A stretch of 64,000 nt of DNA from the NCBI GenBank assembly GCA_044892505.1, contig CM097883.1:275094001-275158000 (forward strand), in the 5' to 3' direction. The stretch's first letter is position 1. The number at the start of each line of letters is the position of its first letter. The notes under the pieces were generated by a model. It did not search any database and was not told the origin of the DNA. It saw only the letters and a list, made by a program, of their open reading frames with translations. A program made the position numbers and the translations under genes. This DNA is from Schmidtea nova. Its lineage: Eukaryota. Positions 7,660-39,330 of this stretch are shown one piece after another.

Positions 7660-7704
<45 letters not shown>

Positions 7705-8054
7705 TGTTGGGCCCGCCAAATCACCTAAAAACACAATAAAACGAACAAAATCATGAAACAATAAAGAAATGATAAAAATAAAAATAGCAAGAAAAACAAA
7801 TTAAAAATAACAATAAAACGACAAATAATAATTGAGAAATTTTCAGTAAAAGGAAATTTTGAAAATAAACCGGTAAACAACCGCAAAAGGGGGCCTGAAA
7901 TAAGAAAAGTAGAATTAAATAAAATAATAGTACAAATAATTAATTAATTACTTAGAAAATCAGGACCACCCAGCGAGAAACCGGAAAAGGAAACAAAATA
8001 ATGTTTAGATTAGATTAAAATAATAAAAATACTTTGAAGGACGGCCTGATCCTG

Positions 8055-8089
8055 ATTGGTCAATCCAACCAGACGGATCAGTATAAATA
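8055..8089 (+). promoter_or_regulatory. LTR core promoter: inverted CCAAT box plus TATA box
   Basis: ATTGG at 8055 and TATAAATA at 8082; the same pair with the same 27-bp spacing occurs in the diverged solo LTR (54458, 54485). Confidence 0.65.
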
Positions 8090-9092
8090 CCGATCCAAAA
8101 ATCACAACAACAGACTTGAGACGTTTTTACTTTTCACTTACAATCAAGACTAAACTTTGATTTAAGTAACATTTCATTTAACGAAGCGAGAATTTTTTGA
8201 AAAAACAGAATTCAAGTACGGAACGTAATTTTTATTGTTATTTTTTAATGTACCCATGATTTTTATTTTAATTAAAAGTTTATATGTAAACGTCATTTCA
8301 TTTTTTCATTGATTATTTTTAATGCATATAGCTATACTTCCTATGCTGCTCACGCGGCGAGGGAGTCCGAGTCGTCGTCGTGGGGCCTCAGGGTCTCACA
8401 TGGCGGTTCAACCTTTTTATTATTTAATTTAGATGTGAAGTTTTATCTAGAAAATTTGATTGAATTTTTAGTCTAATACAGACCATTTGCAAATTATTTA
8501 ATTTTGGGTTGCACAACGGACGAAGGTCGAGGGCCAAATATGTAGATTGCGGAGGGCGGATGGATAAGGAGGGACACCCCATGGTAGGGCATGCTCAGTC
8601 TTTAAATTTTTGGTAAATTGAATCGAAAGGGAACCTCCCGCATGGAAAACAGTGAGCAACAACTAAAATAAATTTGAATAATTTCGTTGGAATGAGAAAA
8701 TCCAACGTAGTCCAAAGTCCGATTTCATTCGGAATCAGCATTTCGCCTACGAAATTTTAACATCGATAAATTCCGATCGCGATGGAATGCGTCGGAAAAT
8801 CCAAATTAAATTAGTTACTAAAAATAGGCCGATCGTCGTATATGACGCGGTTTCCCAAGTTATTCTCCGATCGCTGTATATAGCGCGGAAATCTTGATTA
8901 AATTCGATAATTCCTGAATGCTGTATATAGCACAGGACTAATTATGAACTCTTTATTCCGACCGTGGTAGATCACGGCGGAGAGAAATAAAATTAATCTT
9001 ATTTTTTAACTGTTGTGATTATATGCAACATAATTAAATTATCAACGAATTTCCCCCTTAACTCATATTTATATCCAATAAATGTAATATAG

Positions 9093-9572
9093 ATGTCGAC
9101 AGCTGAACTTATACATCAATTGACGCAACTACGGAATATGGAGCAAGGGAATCTGCGAAATGGAAATATCTCGCAGCTCAAGGATCTACCAGCATCGATA
9201 TTGCGGACCCTCAACTGCCAAATGTATAAGTGGCGACAGGGGTTTGGCCGAAAATGCCCGTTCTCGATATGGACAGGAGGGCACGACCAAATACTCTATC
9301 GAGGAGGACCGAACTGGCCGATTTCTCAAAGGCCGTACTCAAACAAATTTGGCCGACTTGTCGTACTGATCAAGGACACCGATGGACGGACAAGCCGTGT
9401 AATTTATTGGGGGCATATCCCTCGTCGGGAACTATGCCAACTAGGCCTACACGAATTCCTGCCACGAAAACCGTTCGGCAAGGAGTGCCAGAAAGGACAA
9501 TCCTCATTCTCTTGGGCTCGTCTCCGTCAGAAACCGATTAACAGCGAATTGCATAGCCTGTTTCGGAGATAA
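9093..9572 (+). CDS. LTR-encoded ORF1, 159 aa, unknown function
   Basis: ATG directly after TAG acceptor-like site; identical copy in 3' LTR; positional counterpart in solo LTR at 55618. Confidence 0.55.
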   Translation: MSTAELIHQLTQLRNMEQGNLRNGNISQLKDLPASILRTLNCQMYKWRQGFGRKCPFSIWTGGHDQILYRGGPNWPISQRPYSNKFGRLVVLIKDTDGRTSRVIYWGHIPRRELCQLGLHEFLPRKPFGKECQKGQSSFSWARLRQKPINSELHSLFRR

Positions 9573-9755
9573 GAACTGATTGTCAAATCTTTCAAATTGT
9601 GATTAAATATTAATATTCAGTAGTGTTTTTGTTTTGTTGTTTTGAGTTTTGGTATTGTGTTTTTATAATTCATATTCGTAACCAAATAACCCTATAATCA
9701 GTTTCATTTTTCACATCATTTAATCATAGAGTAAATATCCTAAATAAATTATAGA

Positions 9756-10352
9756 ATGAACCCAGATTTGATGCAGAAAGAATTGGAAAAGATGTGGCGG
9801 ATTCGGAGAGCCCAGGACAAGGAATTGGGTCTCCTCAAGGCACAATTGATCAAAGCAGAGGCACAGATTGCATATTTGCGCAAAAGCTGGTTTGCTCCGG
9901 CCCGTATGAAGGAGCAAATCAGTAAAACCGAGCGCGCCCAACAGACTGCAGCCGATTACCAAATGGAATGGGAGGCTACAAAGATAGAACTCCGAAAATG
10001 CCTCCATTCCGTAACTGCCTCATACATCGAGAAGGAACTCAGAGAGCAAATCCGTCCGATTACGTACCAAGCTTGGACGGCAGAAAAGAAGACAGTAAAC
10101 TCCATTGGAACGGATGTCACCGATTTAATTGAAAGTCGGAATGAGACAGCTCCTCCAGCCAATTCAACCACTTCATCGGCGACTGCGCACCAGAAACGCA
10201 AGCGCATTGGGCAGAAACGGCGGAGACAGAGAAAATTATTTGCCCAGCAATTACAAATCCAAGTCGATGGTCTACATCAGATGACTGAGGAAGCATTATT
10301 GACGGAGATTTTTCCTCCGGCGGGAGTTTTTACCGAACTCATTAAAAATTAA
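9756..10352 (+). CDS. LTR-encoded ORF2, 198 aa, coiled coil plus basic NLS-like C-terminal region
   Basis: Protein-level homologue in solo LTR (56445-57008): WFAPARMK/WFNPERVK, IEKELREQIRPITYQAW/ITEQLRPVIRASTFNRW, KRKRIGQKRRRQR/RRNRLGAKKRRER. Confidence 0.8.
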   Translation: MNPDLMQKELEKMWRIRRAQDKELGLLKAQLIKAEAQIAYLRKSWFAPARMKEQISKTERAQQTAADYQMEWEATKIELRKCLHSVTASYIEKELREQIRPITYQAWTAEKKTVNSIGTDVTDLIESRNETAPPANSTTSSATAHQKRKRIGQKRRRQRKLFAQQLQIQVDGLHQMTEEALLTEIFPPAGVFTELIKN

Positions 10353-10826
10353 ATAAATTGTTGCATTGGCTTAAGAATCTCATCGTTCATTTAAATTGAT
10401 TTAATTAACTTTACCAATGATTAAATAAAGATAGAACAAAAGTATAAATTCAGTTTACAAAATATCGAATAGAGATAATTAAATAATTAAGCGAGCATTC
10501 GTTGAAATACTTCTCGCAGACTGAGCAATGATAAAAATAAATTTTCTGAAAGATTAACGCGGGATACATAAGTAGATGATTAAAGCATAAGTCCTTCTAA
10601 CGGCAGCAATGAACCCGTAAACATAAATGGGGAGTAGTACTAGCGATAGTGCTCACCTGCCCATCATTGTTTAACCACCCTGCGCATCACCAACTTGATT
10701 ATATAGGGAAATAATCAAGGGCGCTGGAGTGTAGAATTGCAATTTTATGCATGATCATGGATGAGGGATCCCTAGTCATTGTTAGAACATTTTTCATCTA
10801 ACCCCTCCATGAACCCAGCATAAATT

Positions 10827-10844
10827 TGGGGGCTCAGCCGGGAT
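10827..10844 (+). other. Primer-binding site, tRNA-Pro type
   Basis: TGGGGGCTCAGCCGGGAT, 6 nt after the LTR; 16/18 identical to the canonical tRNA-Pro PBS TGGGGGCTCGTCCGGGAT. Confidence 0.85.
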
Positions 10845-11148
10845 CAACTTCGTTTTATCGGAAAAATGTAAACGTAAAATCTGCAGAGAGGTTTAAAATG
10901 CTCGGGTCAATTAATTTAATAAAAAACAGAAAGGTTATAATTAAATGTAAATTATTGTATAAAAATTAAATAAACAACACGGCAGTGAACAAAAGTGAAT
11001 TTAAAAATTAAAATGCATGCATAATTTGTCGGGACGACAATTTTCAGAAACACGGGGGGAGTTAAATATTAAAAGATACAAAACGAAACATATTACTACC
11101 TTAAAAACGATAAAAATAACAGAGTTAAAACGATTATTTATTCAGTAA

Positions 11149-11610
11149 ATGGAGGAAAAACTGAAAGAAATCGAAGAATTCCTCAACACAGAAAGCGAAA
11201 CATTAGAAACGATTGGCAAGAAAATAAACCGATTTAGAGAAATTGAATTTCAAGAACCCACAACACAGACTGAGGAAACAGATGAATTAATAAAGATAAC
11301 AGAAAGAATAAGTAAAATCGACATAGAGACCCGCTACAAATGGTACAGAACACGATTAGAAAATGCAGAATTAAATATTAAGTGCAGGCAAATAGAACAA
11401 CAGTTAACCTCAACATACAATCGATGGAGGGCGCAAGGGGTAGAAGCAGCGAAAAAATACCGACAGTGCTATATATGTGGGGATAGCGAGATACAAATTA
11501 TGTTTTTACCTTGCGGACATTTTCGTTTTTGTAAGATATGTGCCAGCAAGTGCGACCTATGTCCTATGTGCAACCTGATGATAGACGATAAAATTATTGT
11601 ATATTTATAA
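11149..11610 (+). CDS. Coiled coil plus C-terminal IAP-type RING finger protein (153 aa)
   Basis: CYICGDSEIQIMFLPCGHFRFCKICASKCDLCPMC followed by IIVYL*, the spacing and terminus of XIAP/cIAP RINGs; no BIR domain visible. Confidence 0.85.
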   Translation: MEEKLKEIEEFLNTESETLETIGKKINRFREIEFQEPTTQTEETDELIKITERISKIDIETRYKWYRTRLENAELNIKCRQIEQQLTSTYNRWRAQGVEAAKKYRQCYICGDSEIQIMFLPCGHFRFCKICASKCDLCPMCNLMIDDKIIVYL

Positions 11611-12085: not shown

Positions 12086-12467
12086 GTTAGGAGATTTGTC
12101 CCTTGAAACAAAGGGTTAGGAGATTTGTCCCTTGAAACAAAGGGTTAGGAGATTTGTCCCTTGAAACAAAGGGTTAGGAGATTTGTCCCTTGAAACAAAG
12201 GGTTAGGAGATTTGTCCCTTGAAACAAAGGGTTATGAGATTTGTCCCTTGAAACAAAGGGTTAGGAGATTTGTCCCTTGAAACAAAGGGTTAGGAGATTT
12301 GTCCCTTGAAACAAAGGGTTATGAGATTTGTCCCTTGAAACAAAGGGTTAGGAGATTTGTCCCTTGAAACAAAGGGTTATGAGATTTGTCCCTTGAAACA
12401 AAGGGTTATGAGATTTGTCCCTTGAAACAAAGGGTTATTAGCGGTTTGTCCCTTGAAAAAAAGGGTT
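12086..12467 (+). repeat. Tandem array, 29-bp unit, about 13 copies
   Basis: Unit GTTAGGAGATTTGTCCCTTGAAACAAAGG with a GTTATGAG variant; no spacers. Confidence 0.95.
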
Positions 12468-12509
12468 GAGGCCAATGAGCCTTATTGAATGACCTAGCTA
12501 GGCGTTATG

Positions 12510-12795: not shown

Positions 12796-13408
12796 TAGTG
12801 AATTATAGAGATATCCGGATAAATAGTAACAGGGGGAATATAGACCCATAGTATAATCGTCGACGAGATTTAGAGTAGTGCGCACCAGTAGTTAAGAGAA
12901 TGCGAGTAAAGCTGATTATGCAACCTTAAGTAAAGCATGCAAGGAGAATAGTAAAAATTTGGGCTGACCGGAGCAACCGGCAGAATGAGTAGAACGATTG
13001 TTAGCAGGGAATAATGAATAGAAATGATAAAATAATGATAAACGAGTCAGGAAGACTCAGGGAATTAGAGCGCTCGAGCGACCAATAAATTGGGAAACTG
13101 TGGGAAAAGTAATCGATTTGATAAAACATAGATAATTATTACGACGTAAATAGATAATTGTGACCAGTCTATAGATAATTTAAATAGACTAAAAATAAAG
13201 GGGAATCTGGGAATTGGGAAATAATGAAAACCCAGTAATAAGTAATCCCGAAAGAAAGGGAATAAAAGCGCGACGATAACAATAATGTATCGTTGAGGAC
13301 CTTTGTATTTTAGATATACAAATCAATCAAATCAATCAATCAAGCAAGAAGAATCAGAAAAACGATAAGAGATAGAACAGGAAAATTGAGTATACAAAAG
13401 TAATCCCC

Positions 13409-16400
13409 TTGAGAAAAGGAGCAAAGAGTGTCGAAGTAAAGCCAACGGAAAAGAAAGTCGATAGCAACAGTAATAAAAAAGACAAAACTAGTACTACAAC
13501 AAAATCAACAAAAAAGCAGAAAGCCGGCAAAGATAACCCACAAGGGAGTAAATCGAGGAAAATAATAAGAGATAAATCGATTACCGAGAACGATAAATTG
13601 TCAATAATAAGCAACAGCTCAAGTAACAAAGAAAACCAAGCCGAACCCAAGGAGAACCAAGCAAGTGAAACAGAGAGCGACGAAACTAACAACGATAATA
13701 TCGAAGAAGTAGAAAACGAGGTAGAACCAGAGATAGAAATCAACGCGAGTGATAACGAAAGTATAATATCAGATAACGAAGGAATAAGAGAAACAGAAAG
13801 CGATTCAAGCTCGAGTGGAACAGAAGACGAACATAACAACGAATTAGAAACAAGAGGAAACGAAAGTAAAATAACTCAAGACAGCGGAATTGAAATGAGC
13901 GAACCAAGAGAAGAAATAAAGGATAAATTTTCGGGAGAACCGTTTAACGGAGATGCGAGTAAATTAGAAATTTTTCTCAAGGAATTTGGCATATTCGTGG
14001 AAGTATGCAAATGGAAAGCTGAGACAACAGCAAGTAGAATACAGTTATATTTGAAAGATAGCGCATTGGACCTATATTTGGAAGCAAAAAACGGTACCAA
14101 TCCACCTGCAGACTGGCCAGCGATAAAGGACTTTTTCCAACAAACATTTGGAATAAATAGAGTGCTGAGCGAAGCATTCATAGAATTTTCAATGAGAAAA
14201 CAAAAGATGAATGAATCTAACGCGGTATACGCGAGCGAATTGAAAAAATTAGCAAAATCGGTATTCAAGGATGGGAGTCCAATAAACGAGGAATTAATGG
14301 CAGCTATCTTCATAGGAGGATTAAGAAGACCTGACATAAGAGCGCAAGTAGGATGCCAAGGATGCAAAACCCTAGACCAAGCATTAGAAACAGCTAACAG
14401 ATTCGAACTGCATATGATAGGAAGTGAGGGCAGAATTTATTTAGCCATGGATACAGCGCAAACCGAACCAGAGGTAAATCTCAACAATCACATTCCAAAT
14501 TCGCAACAATTAAACCGACCACCCCCTCAACGAAGGAATGAAGGAAATAAAGTGCAGAACTTTGAAAACCAAAACAATTACAACCCTCAAAGACAAACAA
14601 AACAATGTAAAACATGCGGGAAGTTGGGACACTGGCAGCAAGAATGCTATCAAAATTTGAATTGCGGAAAATGTGGAGTTAAAGGACACTCGGAAAGCAG
14701 ATGTTCTACGATAATCTGTTTTAATTGCGGACGACCTGGTCACTATTCAAGGAATTGCGGACAAAAAGGTAATCAACGAGGAAATTGGCAGAGTAATGGG
14801 AACCGACCAAATTACGGAAATCAAGCAAATACCGTAAACCGACCAGATTATGGGAACCAACAAGTCAATAATAACAATAATCAGAACAAAACCACCCCCA
14901 AAGAAATACATTTAATGCAAGAAGTCCAAAGATTGACGGAACTTATAAACAATACGACGAGAGGAAATCCGCAAACCAATCAACAGCAAATTAGCATGAT
15001 GAGAAAAATAGAAAGCGAAAACGAACGATTGAATCAAGAAAGTCAAGCACGACACGCTCAGGAATGGGCAAGAATACAAAGAGAGGATGAACAAAAACAG
15101 CAAGAAAGAGAGCGACAACCTCTAAGAATTAACATGCTAAGAGCAACAAACCAAACAGACACTCGCGAGAAAGAAACCACACTGGAAATGAATTCGATAG
15201 ACCCAAATCCAGCCGACAACGAAAGTCGAAAAGAGACAGTACAAAAAGACGAAGAAGTAGAAAAAGAAATAAAAAAGGAAGGGGAAACTGAGATAAACCA
15301 GGAAGAGAGAAGAAAAATTTGGAAAAAAGGAATGATGGTAATCATGCCCAACGACCATATGTTTCGATTCCAATATAACGCAAAAGAAAAGGTGGAAATA
15401 CTATTCAATAAAGTAAACCAGATGATTCCAGGAGTGACAAAACTGCCCAGAGAAGCGTTCTTACAAATAGGAGATGCACCATCAGTAAAATTGAAATTAA
15501 CGGATATATGGGAAAACATGGGAGTAGTAGAAACAAAAAGAAATGTGATGAGAATTAAAGAAATAGAACCAGAAGAAATTCCACCACCAATACGTCACGA
15601 AACCCGAATCCGGCGAATATTTGAAGGAAAAATGATAAGAAGGCGTTTAAAAGAGATAGACGAGTTGGGAAAGAAAATGGAAAAAGTCGAAGTAATAGAG
15701 GACAAGAGTGAACCAACACCAGAAATTGACAAAAACGAACCAGAACCAACGGAGAATATACAAGGAGAAACGAACCAAATAGCACATATTAATATGCTAA
15801 GAAATACCACCAGAGAGTTTTCCGATGAAGAAGAAGATAGTGATATCAGTAGCCTAGCAGGAGACATATTAAACGAATCCGAAGATGAAAATAAAGAGAG
15901 AGAAGTAATAAAGACCTCAGAACCTACACAGATAAAAGTAGATGAAATCCAGAAATTACTAGATAACTCACTAGAAGTAATATATAACGAAGAGTTCATG
16001 GACAAGAAACAATATCGGAAATTCATGAAAGCATTATTACAAATGAACTACAAAGAATGGTTACAAGACCGGGAAGTAGACATGTTGAATCGATACGTAG
16101 GGAAATTAATAGAGGAACCACTCCTCAATTACACCATCTCAATAATAATAAATACATCTACACCAAGAATCTGGATCAAAACTCCATTTACAGACGATAT
16201 CTACAGATGGGTAGAGGATAGACTAGGGAGCTCATATAAAAACAAATTCATCTATTCGCAGAATAGACTCGTAAAGAAAAGAACTCACTTAGTAGAAACA
16301 GGTATATGGCCAGGAGAAATAACCCTGTTATCAATATGTGATGAAAAAGAAGAAGAGAACCTACAAGAAGTTGCAAGGGAAGCAAACGCGTGCTTCGAAA

Positions 16401-27200: not shown

Positions 27201-30200
27201 TGTGCAAAATACCAAACACCTAAAGCAGCCATGACAATACAACAGTCACCCAAAGGAGATTACATCATCGGAAAATGTGGAAGAACAGAGACACAGGGAA
27301 CAGAAAACAAAAAACCCCAGGCAATAGATAAGCAAACAACACCAACCCTACGAATTACAATAGAGAGGCCCGAAACAAGAATTGCCACAAACGAAACCGA
27401 AAGAGTGTCTTACCAAATGGAAGTATTATGCTTAGCACTCATACTAATAATGATAAAACGATTAGAGGAAGGAATAGAAATTGAAACTATGACAATAACA
27501 GAAGTAGAAGATACACAGAATACTAACATAAAATGTTGGGCGAGGAATAACGAGGAAATCGGCGTAAATGAAATAAGGAAAAGTCGAAAACCAACAACGA
27601 ATAAAGTAATTAAAGTATCCGAAGTAAAAGCAGATAAGACGTACAAACTATGCCTACTAGAAAAAGAGACAAACAAGAAAGGTACCACAAAATGCAAAAC
27701 ATTTCAACCCGGAGAAGTAATAAAGTTCAGAAGGAGAACGAGGAAGAGAAATAAACAAATCAAGCGGAAAATGAACATAACATTAGAAATAAAAGAGATA
27801 GAACCAAATGTGAAAGGAGTATGCTGGAGGAAGTACGAAAAAGAAACAAATAAAAGAACGACACCACAATGTCAAACAAGCACAGGAGCAACGACGATTC
27901 AAATAAAAGGTTTAGAAAGTAAACAAACTTACGAAATATGTCTGATAAAGAAAAATGATCAGATAACGATAAACGATCTAGAATGCGGAATATACACCAC
28001 TTCATCCGGAACAAGAACTAAAACGATAACACGAAAAAATAAAAGAAGACAACGAAACAAAGGGAAACCGAAGTACACCACTACCTTTAAAAACAATAAA
28101 CAACCGATAAGCCAAGAAGTTACGACAAAACCCGAGAAAAAGACATCAGCAACTCTGACATTATGGAAAATAGAGAATAAAACATTGGAGATATGTTGGA
28201 TAATAGTTCAGAAACATATAAGAAGACAATCAAGAGAGTGCAGAAAAACAAATAAAGAAATCAAGATCGAAAAACTACAATTTAATAGCGAGTATGAAGT
28301 ATGTACAATAGAAAAGACGGACGCACTAGGAAACCAACAAGAAAGATGCGAAACCTACTATACACCAGCGAACGCAACATCAAAAGGAATAACAAGGAAA
28401 CTCGAATTCAGGGAACTAAGCCAAACGAATGAACAAATGGACGCAGAAAAAACAATAACCGACCCTCAAGCAAAATGGACACCCGAAGAAGTTATCAAAG
28501 AAGTCAAAAGAAAGCAAGAGGAACGAGAACAATTAATGAGAAAACTAAAGGGACAATACGGAATAATGTTCAACCAAAGCGAACCTATACAAACAGACGA
28601 GAATAAAGAAATTAAAGAACTAATCGGCTTAGGAATATTAACAGCAACCATACCAGTAATAATCGCGTTATCAGCTATATGGATACGCAAGATAAACCCA
28701 AGAAAATCAACAACCCAATGGCTAAATATAGATAATACAAGCCATGGAGTAGAAATACTAGAAGAAAAAGCACGAGAAGAACCAAATAAGAAAGAAGCGA
28801 AAAGCGGAAAACTAGGAATAAACAACAAAGACAAGGAAATAAAAGAGATTAAAGGCGAAGAGAAAAAATATGAAAGGCGAACCAGAAGCCTACCGCAGAG
28901 TTCAAAATGGTTGGGTCTAACAATAATATTGACATTAATCAATAGGGAAGAAGCAACAAACCTACAAGCAGGGATAAAAATAGTAAATGTCCAGGAGGTC
29001 GAGAAAATATGCTGGAATAGAGAGGATGAACCAATTGGGAAAGATAACCCACTAAAATGCATAATCAGAAAATCCGACCAGGATATAGTACGAATAGAAG
29101 GGATGGATAGAGGAATCATGCATCGAATATGCATAATAGGAAAGGAAAAGAAGTCGGGGCTACCTAAGACAGTCGTATGTCAAAAATACGAAACGCCTGG
29201 ACTCGAATGGTATAGAGTAAAACCAACAAAGAAAGAAATCAAAAACACCATAGATCAACCAGCAACTCAGATAAGAAACACAACGGATAAACCAGGAGAA
29301 GGAGAGAAAAGCACCAATAAAACGAGAGAAAGAATATCACCCCAACAGGAGTGCGTATGCATAGCATTAATACTAGCAATGTCCAAACGTATCGATAAAG
29401 GAATAATAATAGAACAAATGGCCATAACAATAAGGAAAACAAGCAGCAACAAACTATGCTGGGGAACATATAACGAACCAAGGAAGGAATACCAAGTTCA
29501 GACAAGCGACGAATCACGAACAAACAAGGAAATCGAAATACAAGAAATACAAATGAATGAAGAAGGAAGTATATGTATATGGGAGAGAGGAATCCAAGAG
29601 GGAATAGAGCATTGCAAGACATTCCAAAAAGGGGAGATACTGAAATTCGATGAAGAAGAATTAACAAAAACAGAAAGAACTCTGACATTAACAGGACTCG
29701 ATCAGACAGTTAAAGGAATATGTTGGACAAAGCATAACCCAGAAGGGGAAGAAGACAACCTAACTCACTGTAGAGAAATAAAGAATAAAGAAAAAGTCGA
29801 ATTAAAGAAAATGGAAGTAAATAGGACATACGCGATATGTACCTTCACCAGAAAAGGTTCAGAAAAACCAGAATGCGGATTATATCAGATCTCAGAGAAA
29901 CTACAACAACAGATCGAACCAGGAAACATGGAAAACCGAACAAAAGAAAATAACGTCAAACAACTACTAAACCGCCATTGGTCTACCCAAGAAGTAATGA
30001 ACAAAGTCAAGAGTCAAATACCGAAAGAGAAGAAGCCAGAGGCTCAAACCCGAAATGAGATAAAAGTAAATCAGAATAAAAACAAAGAAACAAACATGGG
30101 GAAAGCAGTAATAGGATTGATCAGTATGGGAATATTAATAACGTATGGAATACTGACGACAAGCATAATAATATATTGGAGATACAGAAAGAGAAACAAA

Positions 30201-30488: not shown

Positions 30489-30845
30489 ATGACCGAACAG
30501 GACGAAACAACTGAAATAACTATGGCTATGAGATGGAAGGCACAATGTGATTTATTAGTACGAACAGTCAACTCATTACAGAACCAATTAGCGGAAAGAC
30601 AAATGTTATTATCAGAAAGTTATAACAATTGTTTCGAACAATTACACAGAATAGAGGAACAACAAAGAGCGATAACTGAACTCACCAGAGAAAATCAAAC
30701 GATAAGCAACACCAATCAAAGACAAGCAATAGAAATAAACCATTTAACACGAGGAGAAAGAGAAGGATCCGAAGAAGGATGGATGAGTTGGGTAATAAAT
30801 AGATTAAACAACGAAGCGGAACCAGATTCAACGAATGAGCCATAG
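30489..30845 (+). CDS. Accessory ORF, 118-aa coiled-coil protein
   Basis: Intact ORF with the element's A-rich codon usage, heptad pattern, TAG-AAA-ATG start context. Confidence 0.7.
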   Translation: MTEQDETTEITMAMRWKAQCDLLVRTVNSLQNQLAERQMLLSESYNNCFEQLHRIEEQQRAITELTRENQTISNTNQRQAIEINHLTRGEREGSEEGWMSWVINRLNNEAEPDSTNEP

Positions 30846-30937: not shown

Positions 30938-32314
30938 ATGGACAGAGAAGAACGAATAATCGAAATTTTGAGACTAGAAAACAGAAAATGGAGCAAGAGA
31001 CTCACATGCGGAAAATGTAACAATTTATTACGAGAACCCAGACAAACGATATGTGGATGTAGAATATGTACAAAATGTATACAAGAATTAGATGTAACAG
31101 GAATAACAACATGCCCAGCATGTAAAGAAGGAAGAATAGTGTTGAACGAAACCAGAACGGACAAAGCAACCCAGAGAGAAATTATGAGCACCATAACGGA
31201 GTGCGTAAATACACCTTGTACATGGCAAGGACAAATAAGCAATCTAGAGAACCATATGGAAAAATGCGAGGAAAAGAGAGCCGAATGCGAGAAATGCCAA
31301 CAGACAATAACTCTAAAGAAGAGAGAACAACACAAGGAAGAATGTAAAGAAGAAGAAATCGCATGCGAGTATTGTGAAACTCGAGAAACAAGGAGAAAAA
31401 TCGAAGAGGAACACTTGAATATAACAGAAGAGAAAGTATGCAGACAATATGTAAGTAAATGTCCAAACAATTGCGAAATAACCGAAGAAGTAAAGTTACA
31501 TGAACATTGGAAAGTATGTACCGAAAGACCAAGAGAATGTCCATATAACAAGCAGGGATGCAAAGAAAAGCGGACGCGGCAATCAATGAAACAACACCTA
31601 GAAGAAGCAGCACTAACGCATGTGGAAATGACAAACGAAACGACAAAAGAAACGGAACAGACAATCCAGAAATTAGAAAAAGAAGTAGAATCACATAAGA
31701 TAATGATGAGTTTACTACTAGAAACAAGAGAGCAGTTTGAACTAACTCGCGAAAGAATGGAAAAGAAAATAATAGCCATAGAAGAATTAGGAAAAGGAAT
31801 GAAAATACAATATAATCAATTAATACGAGAAATTGACGAAAGAAGGGACTTACCAATCGCACCTTACCTATGGAAAGTAACAGATTTCAGAGACAAACTA
31901 GCAGAAGCCAGAAATATGACGAAAACAGCAGTAATAAGCCCACCATTTTATTTATGGAAAAACGGGGTTAAAATAAGATTGAAAGTATACCCAAATGGAG
32001 ACGGAAGAGGACAAGGAACACACGTGTCAATATTCTTCTCACTATGTAAAGGAGAATACGATGACCTAATAGAATGGCCCTTGAAAATAGGAGTCATTAT
32101 AAGAATCAAAAGTATGGGAAAACCGGTAGAAAAGTTCTTTGAAACAGACAAACATTCGAGTACGAGCGAAAAACCAACGACAGAATGCGGACTAGCAGCA
32201 GGAGAACCAATGTTTATAAGGAAAGAAAACCTATGGGAGCAACTATATGCAGACACGCTATACATAGAGATGGAGAGGCATGAGAAAACAGACAGAAAAG
32301 GATGGTTGGCGTAA
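30938..32314 (+). CDS. Full-length TRAF-family protein (RING, TRAF zinc fingers, coiled coil, MATH/TRAF-C), 458 aa
   Basis: CGKCNNLLREPRQTICGCRICTKC...CPAC; C-x-C zinc fingers; LWKVTDF...SPPFY...YPNGDGRGQGTHVSIFFSLCKGEYDDLIEWP. Confidence 0.95.
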   Translation: MDREERIIEILRLENRKWSKRLTCGKCNNLLREPRQTICGCRICTKCIQELDVTGITTCPACKEGRIVLNETRTDKATQREIMSTITECVNTPCTWQGQISNLENHMEKCEEKRAECEKCQQTITLKKREQHKEECKEEEIACEYCETRETRRKIEEEHLNITEEKVCRQYVSKCPNNCEITEEVKLHEHWKVCTERPRECPYNKQGCKEKRTRQSMKQHLEEAALTHVEMTNETTKETEQTIQKLEKEVESHKIMMSLLLETREQFELTRERMEKKIIAIEELGKGMKIQYNQLIREIDERRDLPIAPYLWKVTDFRDKLAEARNMTKTAVISPPFYLWKNGVKIRLKVYPNGDGRGQGTHVSIFFSLCKGEYDDLIEWPLKIGVIIRIKSMGKPVEKFFETDKHSSTSEKPTTECGLAAGEPMFIRKENLWEQLYADTLYIEMERHEKTDRKGWLA

Positions 32315-32428: not shown

Positions 32429-33490
32429 ATGGGAAATATAGAAGTAACCTTACAAGAAGTAACAGTACATCAAGACGAAATGATCAGAAATCACATGGAG
32501 CGGATTGGGATATGGATTCATGCCTATTATCGAAAACAGGAGGAATTGGAAAGACAAACCCAAGCACTAAGAGAAGCCGAGAAAACGAATCAAAGAAGTC
32601 GAGAAAAAATAGAAGAAGTCTACAAACTACTAAGACAACAAAACGAATACTACAAAGAGATGATGAAAGAGCGACGAGAGGAGAGGGATAGACAACAAAT
32701 AAAAACAGACCATAAGATTCAGTCAATCACAGAACAAGCCAGATATTGGAAGAAAGAGGCAAAAGACTCTTATAAGGAAGCAAGGGAGATAATAGAACGA
32801 ACAGCGTACAGCGATGATTGGAAACTGTTTAAAGAGATCGATGAATTAAAAGAGGAATTAGGGCAAAAGATCAGTCAAGAAGCATCAAATAAAGTATGGA
32901 GTAAGAAAAGACAACAATTTATCCGAGAACAAGCCAAGAAAATAAAAGAATTAACTTATCAAGTACAAAGAATGGGAGAAGACTTAGCCAATCAAGAACA
33001 GTTAAAAGGTATGCTGACAGGAATGTGGAATCACAAGGAAGAAAACATGAAAAGAGACATAAATGGATATCAAGGAGTGATCACCCAGAAGAAAATAGAA
33101 TTAAAAAGAACTAAAGAAAGAATGGAAGAAACGAGGCAGAGTTATGAAGAGAACATAACAAATTTGGCAAAAGAAAACGAAGAACTGAGAAAGAAGTTGG
33201 CAGAAAAACCAACACCAATAAAAGAAACAAGTATCACAGCAGCAGTGACCGAAATGATGGAGAAGGAAGAGAGAGAGAAAAAATTGGCAGAACTAGAAAA
33301 ACAAATTGAAACCCTAACAGAACAGGCGAACTATCTGGAATACTTATTAGATGAAGAGATCCAGATATCCCACACATACCGAGAAGAAGTCGAAATGTGG
33401 AGGAGCACGGTAATATGGATGCCACTCCCCATAAATCAGGTGGAACCTCAAGACGAAGGTTTTCACGAACCCAACGAAACCCTTGTATAA
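32429..33490 (+). CDS. Accessory ORF, 353-aa coiled-coil protein
   Basis: Intact E/K/R/Q-rich heptad ORF; pyrimidine tract plus TAG directly before ATG. Confidence 0.75.
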   Translation: MGNIEVTLQEVTVHQDEMIRNHMERIGIWIHAYYRKQEELERQTQALREAEKTNQRSREKIEEVYKLLRQQNEYYKEMMKERREERDRQQIKTDHKIQSITEQARYWKKEAKDSYKEAREIIERTAYSDDWKLFKEIDELKEELGQKISQEASNKVWSKKRQQFIREQAKKIKELTYQVQRMGEDLANQEQLKGMLTGMWNHKEENMKRDINGYQGVITQKKIELKRTKERMEETRQSYEENITNLAKENEELRKKLAEKPTPIKETSITAAVTEMMEKEEREKKLAELEKQIETLTEQANYLEYLLDEEIQISHTYREEVEMWRSTVIWMPLPINQVEPQDEGFHEPNETLV

Positions 33491-33565
33491 ATGTGCGGAA
33501 ACCAAGTGTAAATAAATTATGTAAAATAAAAAGTGTCAAGCTGTATTGACCGATGTATAAAAGAA

Positions 33566-34135
33566 ATGAGAAAGCTCGCAATAGCAACACTCCTATGGTT
33601 AACAACCATTACCCTACAGAGAGAAGATCTACAACTAACCGAAACCCAATTACGAGTTCTACCCGACAAAACCTATCAGAAAGTAGACAGCCTAATCGAA
33701 GAAGTAATTAAAGAAATCAACGAATTCCGACAGAAATTCCCCCACAATCAAGATCGTCAAATCCAACAAATCTTCGATAATCAACAACTGAAACTAGAAG
33801 AAACCCGAAAAATCCTGAAAGAAGGTAGAGAACCCATAAAAAGCCTATCCCAAGCTGAAATAGAATATCAAGAGAAATGGATCATAGCAATCATCATAAT
33901 CCTAGCAGTCAGCACAACTATCATCGCAATCACAATCCTGCTTGCCTCATATAGAATAAAAATCCTAAAACAAAAGCAGAAAATCTACAACCAAACCTCC
34001 AGACGAGATAACCGAGCTCAAAGACGAATAAGGAGCCATCTCAACCACATTCAAACCCACTACGAGCTACAAATGATCAACGAGAGGACCCGAACTCAAC
34101 CCCAAGCGAGCCAGACGATCGAACAAATTGTATAA
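33566..34135 (+). CDS. Accessory ORF, small type I membrane protein (signal, helical ectodomain, TM, basic tail)
   Basis: ATG at 33566; MRKLAIATLLWLTTITL; TM WIIAIIIILAVSTTIIAITILLASY. Confidence 0.72.
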   Translation: MRKLAIATLLWLTTITLQREDLQLTETQLRVLPDKTYQKVDSLIEEVIKEINEFRQKFPHNQDRQIQQIFDNQQLKLEETRKILKEGREPIKSLSQAEIEYQEKWIIAIIIILAVSTTIIAITILLASYRIKILKQKQKIYNQTSRRDNRAQRRIRSHLNHIQTHYELQMINERTRTQPQASQTIEQIV

Positions 34136-34323: not shown

Positions 34324-34339
34324 AGGGGTCCCCGGGTGA
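34324..34339 (+). other. Plus-strand priming position (atypical PPT)
   Basis: AGGGGTCCCCGGGTGA abuts the 3' LTR; G-rich but not a pure purine tract. Confidence 0.45.
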
Positions 34340-35727
34340 TGTTGGGCCCGCCAAATCACCTAAAAACACAATAAAACGAACAAAATCATGAAACAATAAA
34401 GAAATGATAAAAATAAAAATAGCAAGAAAAACAAATTAAAAATAACAATAAAACGACAAATAATAATTGAGAAATTTTCAGTAAAAGGAAATTTTGAAAA
34501 TAAACCGGTAAACAACCGCAAAAGGGGGCCTGAAATAAGAAAAGTAGAATTAAATAAAATAATAGTACAAATAATTAATTAATTACTTAGAAAATCAGGA
34601 CCACCCAGCGAGAAACCGGAAAAGGAAACAAAATAATGTTTAGATTAGATTAAAATAATAAAAATACTTTGAAGGACGGCCTGATCCTGATTGGTCAATC
34701 CAACCAGACGGATCAGTATAAATACCGATCCAAAAATCACAACAACAGACTTGAGACGTTTTTACTTTTCACTTACAATCAAGACTAAACTTTGATTTAA
34801 GTAACATTTCATTTAACGAAGCGAGAATTTTTTGAAAAAACAGAATTCAAGTACGGAACGTAATTTTTATTGTTATTTTTTAATGTACCCATGATTTTTA
34901 TTTTAATTAAAAGTTTATATGTAAACGTCATTTCATTTTTTCATTGATTATTTTTAATGCATATAGCTATACTTCCTATGCTGCTCACGCGGCGAGGGAG
35001 TCCGAGTCGTCGTCGTGGGGCCTCAGGGTCTCACATGGCGGTTCAACCTTTTTATTATTTAATTTAGATGTGAAGTTTTATCTAGAAAATTTGATTGAAT
35101 TTTTAGTCTAATACAGACCATTTGCAAATTATTTAATTTTGGGTTGCACAACGGACGAAGGTCGAGGGCCAAATATGTAGATTGCGGAGGGCGGATGGAT
35201 AAGGAGGGACACCCCATGGTAGGGCATGCTCAGTCTTTAAATTTTTGGTAAATTGAATCGAAAGGGAACCTCCCGCATGGAAAACAGTGAGCAACAACTA
35301 AAATAAATTTGAATAATTTCGTTGGAATGAGAAAATCCAACGTAGTCCAAAGTCCGATTTCATTCGGAATCAGCATTTCGCCTACGAAATTTTAACATCG
35401 ATAAATTCCGATCGCGATGGAATGCGTCGGAAAATCCAAATTAAATTAGTTACTAAAAATAGGCCGATCGTCGTATATGACGCGGTTTCCCAAGTTATTC
35501 TCCGATCGCTGTATATAGCGCGGAAATCTTGATTAAATTCGATAATTCCTGAATGCTGTATATAGCACAGGACTAATTATGAACTCTTTATTCCGACCGT
35601 GGTAGATCACGGCGGAGAGAAATAAAATTAATCTTATTTTTTAACTGTTGTGATTATATGCAACATAATTAAATTATCAACGAATTTCCCCCTTAACTCA
35701 TATTTATATCCAATAAATGTAATATAG

Positions 35728-36207
35728 ATGTCGACAGCTGAACTTATACATCAATTGACGCAACTACGGAATATGGAGCAAGGGAATCTGCGAAATGGAA
35801 ATATCTCGCAGCTCAAGGATCTACCAGCATCGATATTGCGGACCCTCAACTGCCAAATGTATAAGTGGCGACAGGGGTTTGGCCGAAAATGCCCGTTCTC
35901 GATATGGACAGGAGGGCACGACCAAATACTCTATCGAGGAGGACCGAACTGGCCGATTTCTCAAAGGCCGTACTCAAACAAATTTGGCCGACTTGTCGTA
36001 CTGATCAAGGACACCGATGGACGGACAAGCCGTGTAATTTATTGGGGGCATATCCCTCGTCGGGAACTATGCCAACTAGGCCTACACGAATTCCTGCCAC
36101 GAAAACCGTTCGGCAAGGAGTGCCAGAAAGGACAATCCTCATTCTCTTGGGCTCGTCTCCGTCAGAAACCGATTAACAGCGAATTGCATAGCCTGTTTCG
36201 GAGATAA
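35728..36207 (+). CDS. LTR-encoded ORF1, 3' LTR copy
   Basis: Translation identical to 9093-9572. Confidence 0.55.
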   Translation: MSTAELIHQLTQLRNMEQGNLRNGNISQLKDLPASILRTLNCQMYKWRQGFGRKCPFSIWTGGHDQILYRGGPNWPISQRPYSNKFGRLVVLIKDTDGRTSRVIYWGHIPRRELCQLGLHEFLPRKPFGKECQKGQSSFSWARLRQKPINSELHSLFRR

Positions 36208-36390
36208 GAACTGATTGTCAAATCTTTCAAATTGTGATTAAATATTAATATTCAGTAGTGTTTTTGTTTTGTTGTTTTGAGTTTTGGTATTGTGTTTTTA
36301 TAATTCATATTCGTAACCAAATAACCCTATAATCAGTTTCATTTTTCACATCATTTAATCATAGAGTAAATATCCTAAATAAATTATAGA

Positions 36391-36987
36391 ATGAACCCAG
36401 ATTTGATGCAGAAAGAATTGGAAAAGATGTGGCGGATTCGGAGAGCCCAGGACAAGGAATTGGGTCTCCTCAAGGCACAATTGATCAAAGCAGAGGCACA
36501 GATTGCATATTTGCGCAAAAGCTGGTTTGCTCCGGCCCGTATGAAGGAGCAAATCAGTAAAACCGAGCGCGCCCAACAGACTGCAGCCGATTACCAAATG
36601 GAATGGGAGGCTACAAAGATAGAACTCCGAAAATGCCTCCATTCCGTAACTGCCTCATACATCGAGAAGGAACTCAGAGAGCAAATCCGTCCGATTACGT
36701 ACCAAGCTTGGACGGCAGAAAAGAAGACAGTAAACTCCATTGGAACGGATGTCACCGATTTAATTGAAAGTCGGAATGAGACAGCTCCTCCAGCCAATTC
36801 AACCACTTCATCGGCGACTGCGCACCAGAAACGCAAGCGCATTGGGCAGAAACGGCGGAGACAGAGAAAATTATTTGCCCAGCAATTACAAATCCAAGTC
36901 GATGGTCTACATCAGATGACTGAGGAAGCATTATTGACGGAGATTTTTCCTCCGGCGGGAGTTTTTACCGAACTCATTAAAAATTAA
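36391..36987 (+). CDS. LTR-encoded ORF2, 3' LTR copy
   Basis: Translation identical to 9756-10352. Confidence 0.8.
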   Translation: MNPDLMQKELEKMWRIRRAQDKELGLLKAQLIKAEAQIAYLRKSWFAPARMKEQISKTERAQQTAADYQMEWEATKIELRKCLHSVTASYIEKELREQIRPITYQAWTAEKKTVNSIGTDVTDLIESRNETAPPANSTTSSATAHQKRKRIGQKRRRQRKLFAQQLQIQVDGLHQMTEEALLTEIFPPAGVFTELIKN

Positions 36988-37454
36988 ATAAATTGTTGCA
37001 TTGGCTTAAGAATCTCATCGTTCATTTAAATTGATTTAATTAACTTTACCAATGATTAAATAAAGATAGAACAAAAGTATAAATTCAGTTTACAAAATAT
37101 CGAATAGAGATAATTAAATAATTAAGCGAGCATTCGTTGAAATACTTCTCGCAGACTGAGCAATGATAAAAATAAATTTTCTGAAAGATTAACGCGGGAT
37201 ACATAAGTAGATGATTAAAGCATAAGTCCTTCTAACGGCAGCAATGAACCCGTAAACATAAATGGGGAGTAGTACTAGCGATAGTGCTCACCTGCCCATC
37301 ATTGTTTAACCACCCTGCGCATCACCAACTTGATTATATAGGGAAATAATCAAGGGCGCTGGAGTGTAGAATTGCAATTTTATGCATGATCATGGATGAG
37401 GGATCCCTAGTCATTGTTAGAACATTTTTCATCTAACCCCTCCATGAACCCAGC

Positions 37455-37486
<32 letters not shown>

Positions 37487-39274: not shown

Positions 39275-39330
<56 letters not shown>

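What the first reader, a model, noticed from the sequence alone, without database searches (positions are those of the whole stretch)
7705..37455. Intact 30-kb LTR retroelement built like a complex enveloped virus
Seen: apparently identical 3.1-kb LTRs, TSD, PBS, no stops or frameshifts in about 22 kb of ORFs, and nine distinct ORFs. Known: ordinary Ty3/Gypsy elements are 5-10 kb with gag-pol and sometimes env; giant Burro elements are described from the planarian Schmidtea mediterranea. Inference: this is a recently active, possibly infectious element that combines a Gypsy replication core with a fusion glycoprotein and a large-DNA-virus-like set of host-modulating genes. I do not recognise this domain combination from any element I know.
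Basis: partly seen in the sequence, partly recalled or inferred. Interest (0 to 1): 0.95.

Follow-up and report, generated by a model that had tools for sequence, protein, structure and literature searches.

The report
Intact giant Burro-like LTR retroelement
This is a complete, very young 29.75-kb copy of a giant Gypsy-type endogenous retrovirus of the "Burro" kind, with an envelope gene and captured cell-death and signalling genes; it is a fine specimen, but the architecture is already in the literature for planarian flatworms.

Summary
Two 3.1-kb LTRs (7705-10820 and 34340-37455) are 100% identical and enclose 23.5 kb. This carries nine open + strand ORFs, about 22 kb in total.

The contents are:
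- a Gag with three CCHC knuckles;
- a 4076-aa polyprotein: Bcl-2-like domain, signal peptide, class III (herpes gB / chuvirus-type) fusion glycoprotein, TM anchor, PR, RT, RNase H, IN, two ankyrin blocks, then about 1,400 aa with no detectable relatives;
- small ORFs for an IAP-type RING protein, a full-length TRAF-like protein, coiled-coil proteins and a small membrane protein.

The structural interpretation is right, but the novelty claim is not. This domain set, including env in frame between gag and pol, is described for Burro/GYPSM1 of Schmidtea mediterranea and a Dugesia tigrina relative (PMC6431247). GAG-ENV-POL elements with gB-type Env are reported for Platyhelminthes (PMC13524379).

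Several points stay open:
- The host species and sequence identity to a named Burro family could not be tested with these tools.
- TSD and PBS are compatible but unproven.
- gag and env-pol lie in different frames. The same +1 relation occurs in two distant relatives, so it is probably native.
- Infectivity is untested.

Interest is modest.

The parts
7660..7704 (.). (AAT)15 microsatellite, 5' flank of the insertion site
7705..10820 (+). 5' LTR, TG...CA, 3116 bp (identity with the 3' LTR runs to 10823 through the shared TAA)
   Evidence: 0 mismatches
9093..9572 (+). ORF inside the LTR, 159 aa, no family hit (copy at 35728-36207)
9756..10352 (+). ORF inside the LTR, 198 aa, coiled-coil N-terminal part and an arginine/lysine-rich stretch, no family hit (copy at 36391-36987)
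   Evidence: longer than every ORF in 2000 shuffles
10827..10845 (+). candidate primer-binding site, starts with TGG, 6 nt after the LTR
   Evidence: not matched to any tRNA
11149..11610 (+). upstream accessory ORF, 153 aa, with a C-terminal IAP-type RING (C3HC4_3)
   Evidence: E 3e-11; XIAP/cIAP RING, E 5e-10; 31% identical RING ORF in relative L003
12086..12796 (+). two tandem-repeat arrays in the leader: 29 bp x 13 (12086-12467) and 32 bp x 9 (12510-12796)
13376..18247 (+). ORF1, Gag-like. Open from 13376, first ATG at 13895 (1450 aa from the ATG). Capsid-like core about 13937-14395, three CCHC knuckles 14606-14758, then about 1150 aa with no recognisable domain
18132..30362 (+). ORF2, a 4076-aa Env-Pol polyprotein, +1 frame relative to ORF1; its frame opens at 18108 (140-nt overlap with ORF1)
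18429..18776 (+). Bcl-2-like helical domain (ORF2 aa ~100-215)
   Evidence: aligns to the N-terminus of P0020, E 3e-7; P0020 has a sub-threshold Pfam Bcl-2 hit, E 1e-3; profile A3: 57 of the 60 PDB hits listed, including the top 55, are Bcl-xL/Bcl-2/Bax, best E 1.1e-3; helical bundle, pLDDT 65-80. Moderate support
18843..18908 (+). signal-peptide-like hydrophobic segment that begins with a Met (ORF2 aa 238-259)
   Evidence: read directly from the sequence
18909..20579 (+). Env ectodomain, a class III fusion glycoprotein (ORF2 aa 260-816)
   Evidence: PF24664; 931 homologues; pLDDT above 90
20580..20687 (+). Env transmembrane anchor (ORF2 aa 817-852)
21237..21533 (+). retroviral aspartyl protease (D-T-G motif present)
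22188..22664 (+). reverse transcriptase (Y-I-D-D motif present)
22851..23240 (+). RNase H (Ty3/Gypsy type)
23565..24644 (+). integrase: H2C2 zinc domain, D,D,E core and a conserved C-terminal part
24954..26195 (+). two ankyrin-repeat blocks (ORF2 aa 2275-2364 and ~2603-2688)
26196..30362 (+). C-terminal ~1390 aa of ORF2 with no detectable relatives. One highly charged low-complexity stretch and two TM-like segments (aa 3494-3519 and 3990-4015)
30489..30845 (+). ORF, 118 aa, coiled-coil-like
30938..32314 (+). full-length TRAF-like ORF, 458 aa: RING, TRAF zinc fingers, MATH/TRAF-C
   Evidence: TRAF3 MATH 1e-23; TRAF6 RING-zf 2e-12; closest database proteins 26% identical
32429..33490 (+). ORF, 353 aa, charged coiled coil
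33533..34135 (+). ORF, 200 aa (first ATG at 33566), with one TM segment followed by a basic tail
34340..37455 (+). 3' LTR, identical to the 5' LTR
37456..37486 (.). continuation of the trinucleotide microsatellite, 3' flank

Best explanation
The region is one complete, recently inserted copy of a giant Ty3/Gypsy-type (Metaviridae) endogenous retrovirus-like element of the Burro kind, with gene order GAG-ENV-POL.

Shown:
- identical 3.1-kb LTRs;
- a Gag with three zinc knuckles;
- a 4076-aa polyprotein in which a Bcl-2-like domain, a signal peptide, a class III (gB/chuvirus-type) fusion glycoprotein and its membrane anchor precede PR, RT, RNase H, IN, ankyrin repeats and a long unknown tail;
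- six small ORFs that include an IAP-type RING protein and a complete TRAF-like protein.

Inferred mechanism:
1. The 5' LTR drives a genomic RNA that is translated into Gag. Env-Pol is made either by a shift into the +1 frame in the 140-nt overlap or from its own ATG on a separate (possibly spliced) message.
2. The internal signal peptide and the downstream TM anchor place the Env ectodomain in the ER lumen, while everything before and after it stays cytosolic. This is why env can sit in frame with pol.
3. The protease then cuts out the parts. Gag particles package the RNA with RT and IN, and a tRNA primes at the site after the 5' LTR.
4. The DNA copy is integrated, here into an (AAT)n microsatellite.
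5. The captured host-type proteins (Bcl-2-like, IAP-RING, TRAF-like, ankyrin) would hold off apoptosis and bend ubiquitin and NF-kB-type signalling in the expressing cell. The small ORFs are probably expressed from subgenomic messages, as in complex retroviruses.
For: - LTR identity and ends.
- ORFs and frames.
- Pfam domains.
- Catalytic motifs of PR, RT and IN, visible in the alignment to P0001.
- Env: 931 homologues, a confident model, gB fold, chu-like and related negative-strand RNA virus glycoproteins as the closest viral structures.
- Signal peptide and TM.
- Bcl-2-like.
- RING and TRAF.
- Uniform A-rich coding-strand composition from 13.4 to 34 kb, accessory ORFs included.
- Relatives with the same Bcl-2-like-Env unit, polyprotein layout and a RING accessory ORF (L001, L003-L006).
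- The same +1 frame relation between the gag-side ORF and the Bcl-2-like-Env ORF in L005 and L006, which are only 34% identical in Env.
- Literature describing the same architecture: PMC6431247 and PMC13524379. BURRO1 is reported as expressed and 'highly abundant and active' in PMC8532177.
Against: - No Burro reference sequence and no planarian genome were available to the tools. Family membership rests on architecture, and the host is unidentified.
- TSD and PBS are not verifiable, and no clear polypurine tract was found.
- ORF1 and ORF2 are in different frames, which could be a single disabling change or an assembly indel rather than a native feature. In L003 the shift is -1, and in L001 gag-env-pol is one ORF.
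- ORF1 has 173 open codons before its first ATG.
- About 2,500 aa (the ORF1 tail and the ORF2 tail) have no assignable function.
- dUTPase-like, SUMO-like and BIR domains reported for Burro were not detected.
- Expression, splicing, particles and mobility are all inference.
Confidence: 0.85

Rival explanations
1. It is a structurally complete but dead copy. The frame change between the gag ORF and the env-pol ORF is one disabling mutation (or an assembly indel), so no Gag-Pol fusion can be made and the copy is not autonomous.
For: Burro1 and the D. tigrina relative are described with a single gag-env-pol ORF, and L001 also has one ORF. The shift direction is not uniform among relatives (L003 is -1).
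Against: The LTRs have no differences and there is no other interruption in 22 kb. L005 and L006, very distant relatives, show the same +1 relation with an ATG in the overlap. ORF2 has its own ATG eight codons after its frame opens.
Confidence: 0.25
2. It is an assembly artefact: a collapsed or chimeric join of several repeat copies, with LTR identity produced by consensus polishing.
For: The literature notes that Burro elements are numerous and make planarian genomes hard to assemble. Two N gaps lie just upstream (2322-2493 and 6975-7131).
Against: There is no N inside the element. The coding-strand composition is continuous, the frames are uninterrupted, and both ends abut the same microsatellite in phase.
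Confidence: 0.07
3. The accessory ORFs are host genes that merely lie between two LTRs (a recombinant between two elements, or a captured segment) and are not genes of the element.
For: The TRAF, RING, ankyrin and Bcl-2-like domains are of cellular type. The TRAF ORF is only 26% identical to any database protein, so its source is unknown.
Against: All are on the element's strand, intronless and tightly packed, and they share its unusual A-rich composition. A RING accessory ORF and a Bcl-2-like-Env fusion recur in distant relatives. The literature reports the same motifs as integral to Burro.
Confidence: 0.05
4. It is the provirus of a currently circulating, horizontally transmitted enveloped retrovirus rather than a vertically inherited retrotransposon with an env.
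For: Env is intact and confidently folded, with a signal peptide, a TM anchor and a furin-like site. The LTRs are identical. The literature raises the provirus hypothesis.
Against: No evidence for particles or transmission is available here. PMC13524379 finds that env and pol largely co-diverge with their hosts, which fits long-term genomic residence.
Confidence: 0.15

Closest known systems
[quoted passage not shown] 2018; described in PMC6431247)
   Same: Giant Gypsy-like element of about 30 kb with multi-kb LTRs and tandem repeats. Gag with three CCHC knuckles. Bcl-2-like domain directly before an env that lies in frame upstream of PR-RT-RH-IN. Ankyrin repeats, MATH/TRAF, RING/IAP-family motif and coiled coil.
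   Different: Burro1 is described with one 4,873-aa ORF that carries MATH/TRAF inside the polyprotein. Here gag is a separate ORF in another frame, TRAF is a complete separate ORF downstream of pol, and the RING protein is an ORF upstream of gag. dUTPase-like, SUMO-like and BIR motifs were not detected. No sequence comparison was possible.
Burro-like element of Dugesia (Girardia) tigrina (PMC6431247)
   Same: Accessory ORFs can exist outside the polyprotein; the overall layout is the same.
   Different: There the MATH/TRAF ORF is upstream, Gag has two knuckles and a midasin-like region is reported. None of these is seen here.
Metagenome-derived relatives P0166/L003, P0001/L001, L004-L006 (ENA ERZ25039515 and ERZ2271731)
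   Same: Env 34-38% and Pol 42-48% identical. Bcl-2-like-Env unit (L005, L006), RING accessory ORF (L003), ankyrin, and giant polyproteins of 3,865-4,844 aa.
   Different: They have extra protease copies and about 1,350 aa between Env and PR in L003, an RNase T-type exonuclease ORF, and no TRAF. The post-integrase tails and the Gag tails are not alignable.
GAG-ENV-POL Ty3/Gypsy 'errantiviruses' with HSV/gB-type ENV of Nematoda, Bryozoa and Platyhelminthes (PMC13524379)
   Same: The gene order and the class III gB-type Env fold.
   Different: As far as that text was read, those elements are described with gag, env and pol only. The size and the accessory gene set here are far larger.
Glycoproteins of chu-like and related negative-strand RNA viruses (Pfam PF24664), also captured by mosquito BEL/Pao elements (PMC7642597, cited)
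   Same: Closest viral structural matches to Env (Foldseek E 1e-37 to 1e-31) and about 20-27% sequence identity to stand-alone ~650-aa glycoproteins.
   Different: Those are stand-alone genes of RNA viruses. Here the glycoprotein is embedded in a reverse-transcribing polyprotein.
Complex retroviruses and foamy-like fish ERVs with accessory ORFs (PMC6431247)
   Same: LTR element with env and several small ORFs outside gag-pol.
   Different: The Pol here is of Ty3/Gypsy type, env lies upstream of pol, and the accessory genes are unrelated.

Membership tests
Ty3/Gypsy (Metaviridae) LTR retrotransposon | Two direct LTRs with TG...CA ends | tested here: met
   3116-bp LTRs, 100% identical, TG...CA
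Ty3/Gypsy (Metaviridae) LTR retrotransposon | Pol domain order PR-RT-RNase H-IN, with Gypsy-type RNase H and an H2C2 integrase | tested here: met
   RVP, RVT_1, RT_RNaseH/RT_RNaseH_2, Integrase_H2C2, rve, in that order; catalytic motifs visible
Ty3/Gypsy (Metaviridae) LTR retrotransposon | Gag with CCHC zinc knuckle(s) | tested here: met
   three knuckles; the capsid-like core aligns weakly to the Retrotrans_gag-bearing ORFs of L003/L004
Ty3/Gypsy (Metaviridae) LTR retrotransposon | tRNA primer-binding site, polypurine tract and 4-6-bp target-site duplication | tested here: inconclusive
   Candidate PBS at 10827-10845 not matched to a tRNA. No clear PPT. TAAT duplication compatible but uninformative inside (AAT)n
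Burro (giant Gypsy-like elements of dugesiid planarians) | Total length around or above 30 kb, with an internal region up to 25 kb | tested here: met
   29,751 bp in total, 23.5 kb internal; literature figures
Burro (giant Gypsy-like elements of dugesiid planarians) | env in frame with pol, between gag and PR, preceded by a Bcl-2-like domain | tested here: met
   for Env inside ORF2. Bcl-2-like has moderate support. Gag, however, is in a separate frame
Burro (giant Gypsy-like elements of dugesiid planarians) | Accessory motifs: MATH/TRAF, ankyrin, BIR/RING (IAP family), coiled coil (Smc-like) | tested here: met
   Only the IAP-type RING was found, not a BIR domain
Burro (giant Gypsy-like elements of dugesiid planarians) | dUTPase-like domain between PR and RT; SUMO-like domain | tested here: inconclusive
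   No Pfam hit at E up to 1. A three-sequence profile of the PR-RT spacer hit only retroviral RT N-termini in the PDB
Burro (giant Gypsy-like elements of dugesiid planarians) | Host is a planarian of the family Dugesiidae | not testable with these tools
   Exact-protein look-ups of flanking genes found nothing. The AT-rich flanks (GC 0.20-0.35) agree with the >70% A/T reported for S. mediterranea, but this is not specific
Burro (giant Gypsy-like elements of dugesiid planarians) | Nucleotide or protein similarity to the Burro-1 to -4 / GYPSM1 reference sequences; common clade in an RT/IN tree | not testable with these tools
   No reference sequence could be reached. The closest proteins in the searched collections are 42-48% identical in Pol
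GAG-ENV-POL errantivirus-like elements with gB-type ENV (PMC13524379) | Gene order gag, env, pol within one LTR pair | tested here: met
GAG-ENV-POL errantivirus-like elements with gB-type ENV (PMC13524379) | Env has the class III (herpesvirus gB-like) fold | tested here: met
   the top 50 PDB matches are all herpesvirus gB, E down to 3e-14, probability 1.0. TM-scores are only 0.3-0.4, as expected for an elongated multi-domain protein in one conformation
Retroviridae (complex retrovirus) | Retroviral-type Pol, with env downstream of pol | tested here: not met
   Pol is of Ty3/Gypsy type and env lies upstream of PR

The most novel reading that the evidence does not exclude
The element may be an undescribed lineage within the Burro group whose organisation is not in the published descriptions. 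Its distinguishing features would be:
- an IAP-RING ORF in the leader;
- a gag ORF joined to a Bcl-2-like-Env-Pol ORF by a +1 frame relation that is conserved in relatives only 34% identical in Env, hinting at programmed +1 frameshifting or a dedicated Env-Pol message;
- a complete TRAF gene downstream of pol;
- two ORFs carried inside the LTR;
- a ~1,400-aa post-ankyrin tail with two membrane anchors and no relatives anywhere.

On this reading the copy would be replication-competent today.
Probability: 0.3. Interest if true: 0.55.

Novelty: already known. Interest (0 to 1): 0.3.

Why it matters
The element shows how far an LTR retroelement can grow. A single 30-kb unit combines a Gypsy replication core with a fusion glycoprotein shared with negative-strand RNA viruses and herpesviruses, plus captured regulators of apoptosis and ubiquitin/NF-kB-type signalling.

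A copy with identical LTRs and fully open frames is a clean reference for three tasks:
- annotating such elements;
- studying how an envelope protein can be made from inside a polyprotein (signal peptide plus stop-transfer topology);
- asking how gag and env-pol expression are coupled.

The kind itself is published, however, so the value lies in the detail and not in discovery.

Tried and rejected
1. Exact-sequence look-ups of the TRAF ORF, the flanking galactosyltransferase-like ORF and the hAT-like ORF found no record, so the host stays unidentified.

2. The word-indexed protein search with the Env piece alone found nothing, and so did a PDB sequence search. Only the exhaustive HMMER search and fold comparison resolved Env.

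3. The whole ORF2 search gave only five hits, all through Pol.

4. The TRAF ORF search gave only distant animal TRAFs at 26% identity, with no planarian hit and no source gene.

5. Single-sequence AlphaFold of ORF1 aa 640-1450 gave pLDDT 34 and is unusable, so it was not sent to fold search.

6. Pfam on ten sub-pieces at E up to 1 added only a second ankyrin block. PHROGs on the small ORFs gave nothing credible.

7. The dUTPase test of the PR-RT spacer was negative or inconclusive.

8. There are no tRNA genes and no Rfam families in the window or loci, so the PBS is unassigned.

9. There is no internal duplication among the element's proteins. Outside the element the window holds no second related copy, only an unrelated degraded Gypsy RH-IN fragment.

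10. The Grohme et al. 2018 paper is not held in the library, so the layouts of Burro-2, -3 and -4 could not be read.

11. Rejected idea: that Env is of baculovirus-F/class I type, as in Drosophila gypsy. The fold is class III.

Declared slip: while reasoning about the PBS, the Bcl-2-like motif and frameshift signals, I recalled from memory the 3' end of a tRNA, short Bcl-2-family motif strings and two yeast frameshift heptamers.

The alignment tools printed consensus lines of their own accord.

Full report

Yes. A direct repeat 26,635 bp apart extends without gaps or mismatches over 3119 bases, 7705-10823 = 34340-37458. The repeat starts with TG. Its last three bases, TAA, are shared by accident with the flanking trinucleotide repeat.

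The element is embedded in a perfect (AAT)n microsatellite (7660-7704 and 37456-37486). A 4-bp TAAT duplication is compatible and would leave the microsatellite in phase. Inside a trinucleotide repeat that has a one-in-three chance, so the TSD is not evidence.

A 19-nt stretch beginning with TGG lies 6 nt after the 5' LTR (10827-10845). It is where a primer-binding site should be and is unique in the window. No tRNA gene was available to match it. I see no convincing polypurine tract before the 3' LTR.

The 4076-codon ORF cannot be chance. The two ORFs inside the LTR (198 and 159 aa) exceeded every one of 2000 shuffles that preserved local composition.

From 13.4 to 34 kb the + strand is uniformly A-rich (AT skew 0.29-0.53). 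The flanks are not.

**2. What is encoded?**

The features run in this order:

- **5' LTR**, with its two ORFs. Neither has a family hit; one has a coiled-coil part and an arginine/lysine-rich stretch.
- **Candidate PBS.**
- **A 153-aa ORF** whose C-terminus is an IAP-type RING (Pfam C3HC4_3, E 3e-11; XIAP/cIAP RING domains, E 5e-10).
- **Two tandem-repeat arrays**, 29 bp x 13 and 32 bp x 9.
- **ORF1** (open from 13376, first ATG at 13895). It has a capsid-like core that aligns weakly with the Retrotrans_gag-bearing ORFs of relatives and three CCHC knuckles. About 1150 aa of unknown function follow.
- **ORF2** (18132-30362, 4076 aa).
- **Four ORFs downstream of ORF2**:
  - a 118-aa coiled-coil ORF;
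  - a complete TRAF-like protein with RING, TRAF zinc fingers and MATH/TRAF-C (TRAF3 MATH E 1e-23; TRAF6 RING-zf E 2e-12);
  - a 353-aa charged coiled coil;
  - a 200-aa protein with one TM segment.
- **3' LTR.**

ORF2 contains, in order:

- a helical Bcl-2-like domain (aa ~100-215);
- a textbook signal-peptide-like segment that begins with a Met (aa 238-259);
- a fusion-glycoprotein ectodomain (Pfam PF24664, profile positions 5-579 of 653, E 1e-70);
- a strong TM anchor (aa 817-852);
- protease, RT, RNase H and integrase, with their catalytic motifs in place;
- two ankyrin blocks;
- about 1390 aa with no detectable relatives, which hold one highly charged low-complexity stretch and two further TM-like segments.

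**3. Env**

The word-indexed search and the PDB sequence search were blank. The exhaustive HMMER search found 931 homologues in two tiers:

- 30-47% identical domains buried in giant polyproteins;
- stand-alone glycoproteins of about 650 aa at 20-27% identity.

An AlphaFold model of ORF2 aa 1-900, built with 118 of these as alignment, had mean pLDDT 78.9 and above 90 across the ectodomain. Foldseek placed it with herpesvirus gB: the top 50 PDB matches were all gB, with E down to 3e-14. Among viral models the closest were glycoproteins of chu-like, qin-related and xinmo viruses, with E from 1e-37 to 1e-31. Env is therefore a class III fusogen, not the class I F-type of Drosophila gypsy.

**4. 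Bcl-2-like domain**

Pfam did not detect it in the window's protein. Three other results point to it:

- ORF2 aa 135-210 align to the N-terminus of relative P0020 (E 3e-7).
- P0020 itself has a sub-threshold Pfam Bcl-2 hit (E 1e-3, below the gathering score).
- A three-sequence profile (A3) searched against all PDB sequences gave Bcl-xL, Bcl-2 or Bax for 57 of the 60 hits listed, including the top 55, with a best E of 1.1e-3.

The model shows a helical bundle at pLDDT 65-80. I rate this as moderate support.

**5. Relatives**

The collections hold a small family of giant polyproteins with the same layout:

- P0001/L001: 3865 aa, gag-env-PR-PR-RT-RH-IN in a single ORF.
- P0166/L003: a gag ORF, then a 4844-aa Env-Pol polyprotein with three protease copies and ankyrin, followed by accessory ORFs that include an RNase T-type exonuclease and a C3HC4_3 RING.
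- L004, L005 and L006, from the same ENA sample as L003.

Against the window, Env is 34-38% identical, Pol 42-48%, the RING ORF 31% and the Gag core 23%. The Bcl-2-like-Env unit is contiguous in L005 and L006. Nothing else aligns: not the Gag tail, the post-integrase tail, the TRAF ORF or the other small ORFs. The accessory load is thus lineage-specific around a conserved gag / Bcl-2-like-Env / Pol core.

**6. The gag / env-pol junction**

ORF2 lies in the +1 frame relative to ORF1. Its frame opens 140 nt before the ORF1 stop, and an ATG follows eight codons later. That is one frame change and no stop inside any ORF.

L005 and L006 show the same +1 relation, with 80-92-nt open overlaps and an ATG in the overlap. 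L003 is -1 with a 40-nt overlap, and L001 is one continuous ORF. Because copies only 34% identical in Env share the +1 arrangement, I consider it more likely native than a lesion (about 65:35). It could reflect frameshifting or separate initiation, perhaps on a spliced message. This cannot be settled from sequence alone.

**7. Mechanism** (inferred, apart from the anatomy above)

The signal peptide and the TM anchor give a consistent topology. Everything before the signal peptide (and Gag, if fused) is cytosolic, the Env ectodomain is lumenal, and PR-RT-IN after the anchor is cytosolic again. That explains how env can be in frame with pol.

Protease processing, particle assembly, tRNA-primed reverse transcription and integration would follow the Ty3/Gypsy scheme. 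The Bcl-2-like, IAP-RING, TRAF-like and ankyrin proteins plausibly blunt apoptosis and rewire ubiquitin and NF-kB-type signalling in expressing cells. The small ORFs would need subgenomic messages.

Zero differences between two 3.1-kb LTRs indicate a very recent insertion. An absolute age needs the host's mutation rate, and assembly polishing or gene conversion could also homogenise LTRs.

**8. Comparison with what is known**

Arkhipova & Yushenova 2019 (PMC6431247) summarise Burro elements of Schmidtea mediterranea. Burro1 equals Jurka's GYPSM1 of 2007. The published features are:

- an internal region up to 25 kb and a total above 30 kb;
- thousands of copies;
- tandem repeats;
- Gag with three CCHC knuckles;
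- MATH/TRAF, SUMO-like and Bcl-2-like domains;
- env in frame between gag and pol, with hits to mononegavirus fusion glycoproteins;
- PR, a dUTPase-like domain, RT, RH and IN;
- ankyrin, BIR, AIR1 and Smc motifs;
- accessory ORFs that can alternatively be subdomains of the polyprotein.

A Dugesia tigrina relative and decayed D. japonica copies are also described, and the authors propose that these elements are integrated proviruses.

PMC13524379 reports that platyhelminth env-carrying Gypsy elements have gB-type ENV in GAG-ENV-POL order. PMC8532177 shows BURRO1 transcripts in intestinal cells under PIWI control and calls it highly abundant and active.

The window's element matches this description point by point, with these exceptions:

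- the placement of TRAF (a separate, complete ORF downstream of pol);
- the RING ORF upstream of gag;
- the two-frame gag / env-pol arrangement;
- dUTPase-like, SUMO-like and BIR domains, which I could not detect.

**9. Membership and novelty**

Membership in Ty3/Gypsy and in the GAG-ENV-POL gB-type group is met on the tested features. For Burro in the strict sense, architecture and size are met. The two decisive features could not be tested: a dugesiid planarian host, and sequence similarity to the named references. The AT-rich flanks agree with the >70% A/T reported for S. mediterranea but are not specific.

I therefore file the finding as already known. About 30% probability remains that this particular family and its ORF organisation are undescribed within the group.

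**10. Limits and declarations**

- The consensus lines printed by the alignment tool were not used.
- The N runs at 2322-2493 and 6975-7131 were left as they are.
- Nothing in the window looked human.
- None was entered into a tool or used as evidence.

Noticed in passing
window 61410-61428 (- strand): A 19-mer that differs at 3 positions from the element's candidate PBS, against 0 matches expected by chance. It may be the PBS of another, older LTR element on the opposite strand, or a tRNA-derived remnant.
   Followed up: no
window 46084-47311 and 63031-63913: Blocks of 72-85% identical direct repeats about 17 kb apart, with internal 269-bp and 144-bp tandem duplications. They could be diverged LTRs of an older element that encloses the Gypsy fragment and the ORFs between them.
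   Followed up: partly
window 49544-51061 (+): A fragmentary RNase H-integrase of a different Gypsy element, 26-45% identical to ORF2 and split into several ORFs. It is not a Burro-type copy.
   Followed up: partly
window 48107-49333 (+): An intronless 408-aa ORF with a Galactosyl_T domain (E 1e-29). It is the only candidate host gene in the window. Its exact sequence is not on record in the collection.
   Followed up: partly
window 42334-44862 (-): Two adjacent ORFs (557 and 282 aa). The first has a DUF4371 domain, typical of hAT-like transposases.
   Followed up: no
window 51294-51977; 45526-46046; 38817-39304: A 300-bp direct repeat at 100% identity with 384-bp spacing, a 178-bp inverted repeat at 99% complementarity, and an 85-bp tandem array. 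The flanks are repeat-dense.
   Followed up: no
window 54000-58000: A block with GC 0.40 and positive AT skew, unlike its surroundings. It holds two 211-aa + strand ORFs (55618-56253 and 56373-57008) with no Pfam hit.
   Followed up: no
window 9093-10352 and 35728-36987: Each LTR carries two ORFs (159 and 198 aa) longer than any ORF in 2000 composition-preserving shuffles. LTR-borne coding sequence is unusual. Whether they lie in U3 and are transcribed is unknown.
   Followed up: partly
P0021 (NCBI HBK71150.1): A 2627-aa Env-PR-RT-RH-IN polyprotein of this family is deposited as a hypothetical protein of a Flavobacteriaceae MAG. This is almost certainly a mis-binned eukaryotic contig.
   Followed up: no
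L003-L006 (ENA ERZ25039515): One metagenome assembly holds at least four distinct giant elements of this family, which suggests that the sample contains DNA of an animal host rich in them. The sample's nature could not be looked up.
   Followed up: partly
window 13376-13894: ORF1's frame is open for 173 codons (acidic, serine-rich) before the first ATG. This hints at a non-ATG start, an upstream exon or a remnant.
   Followed up: no
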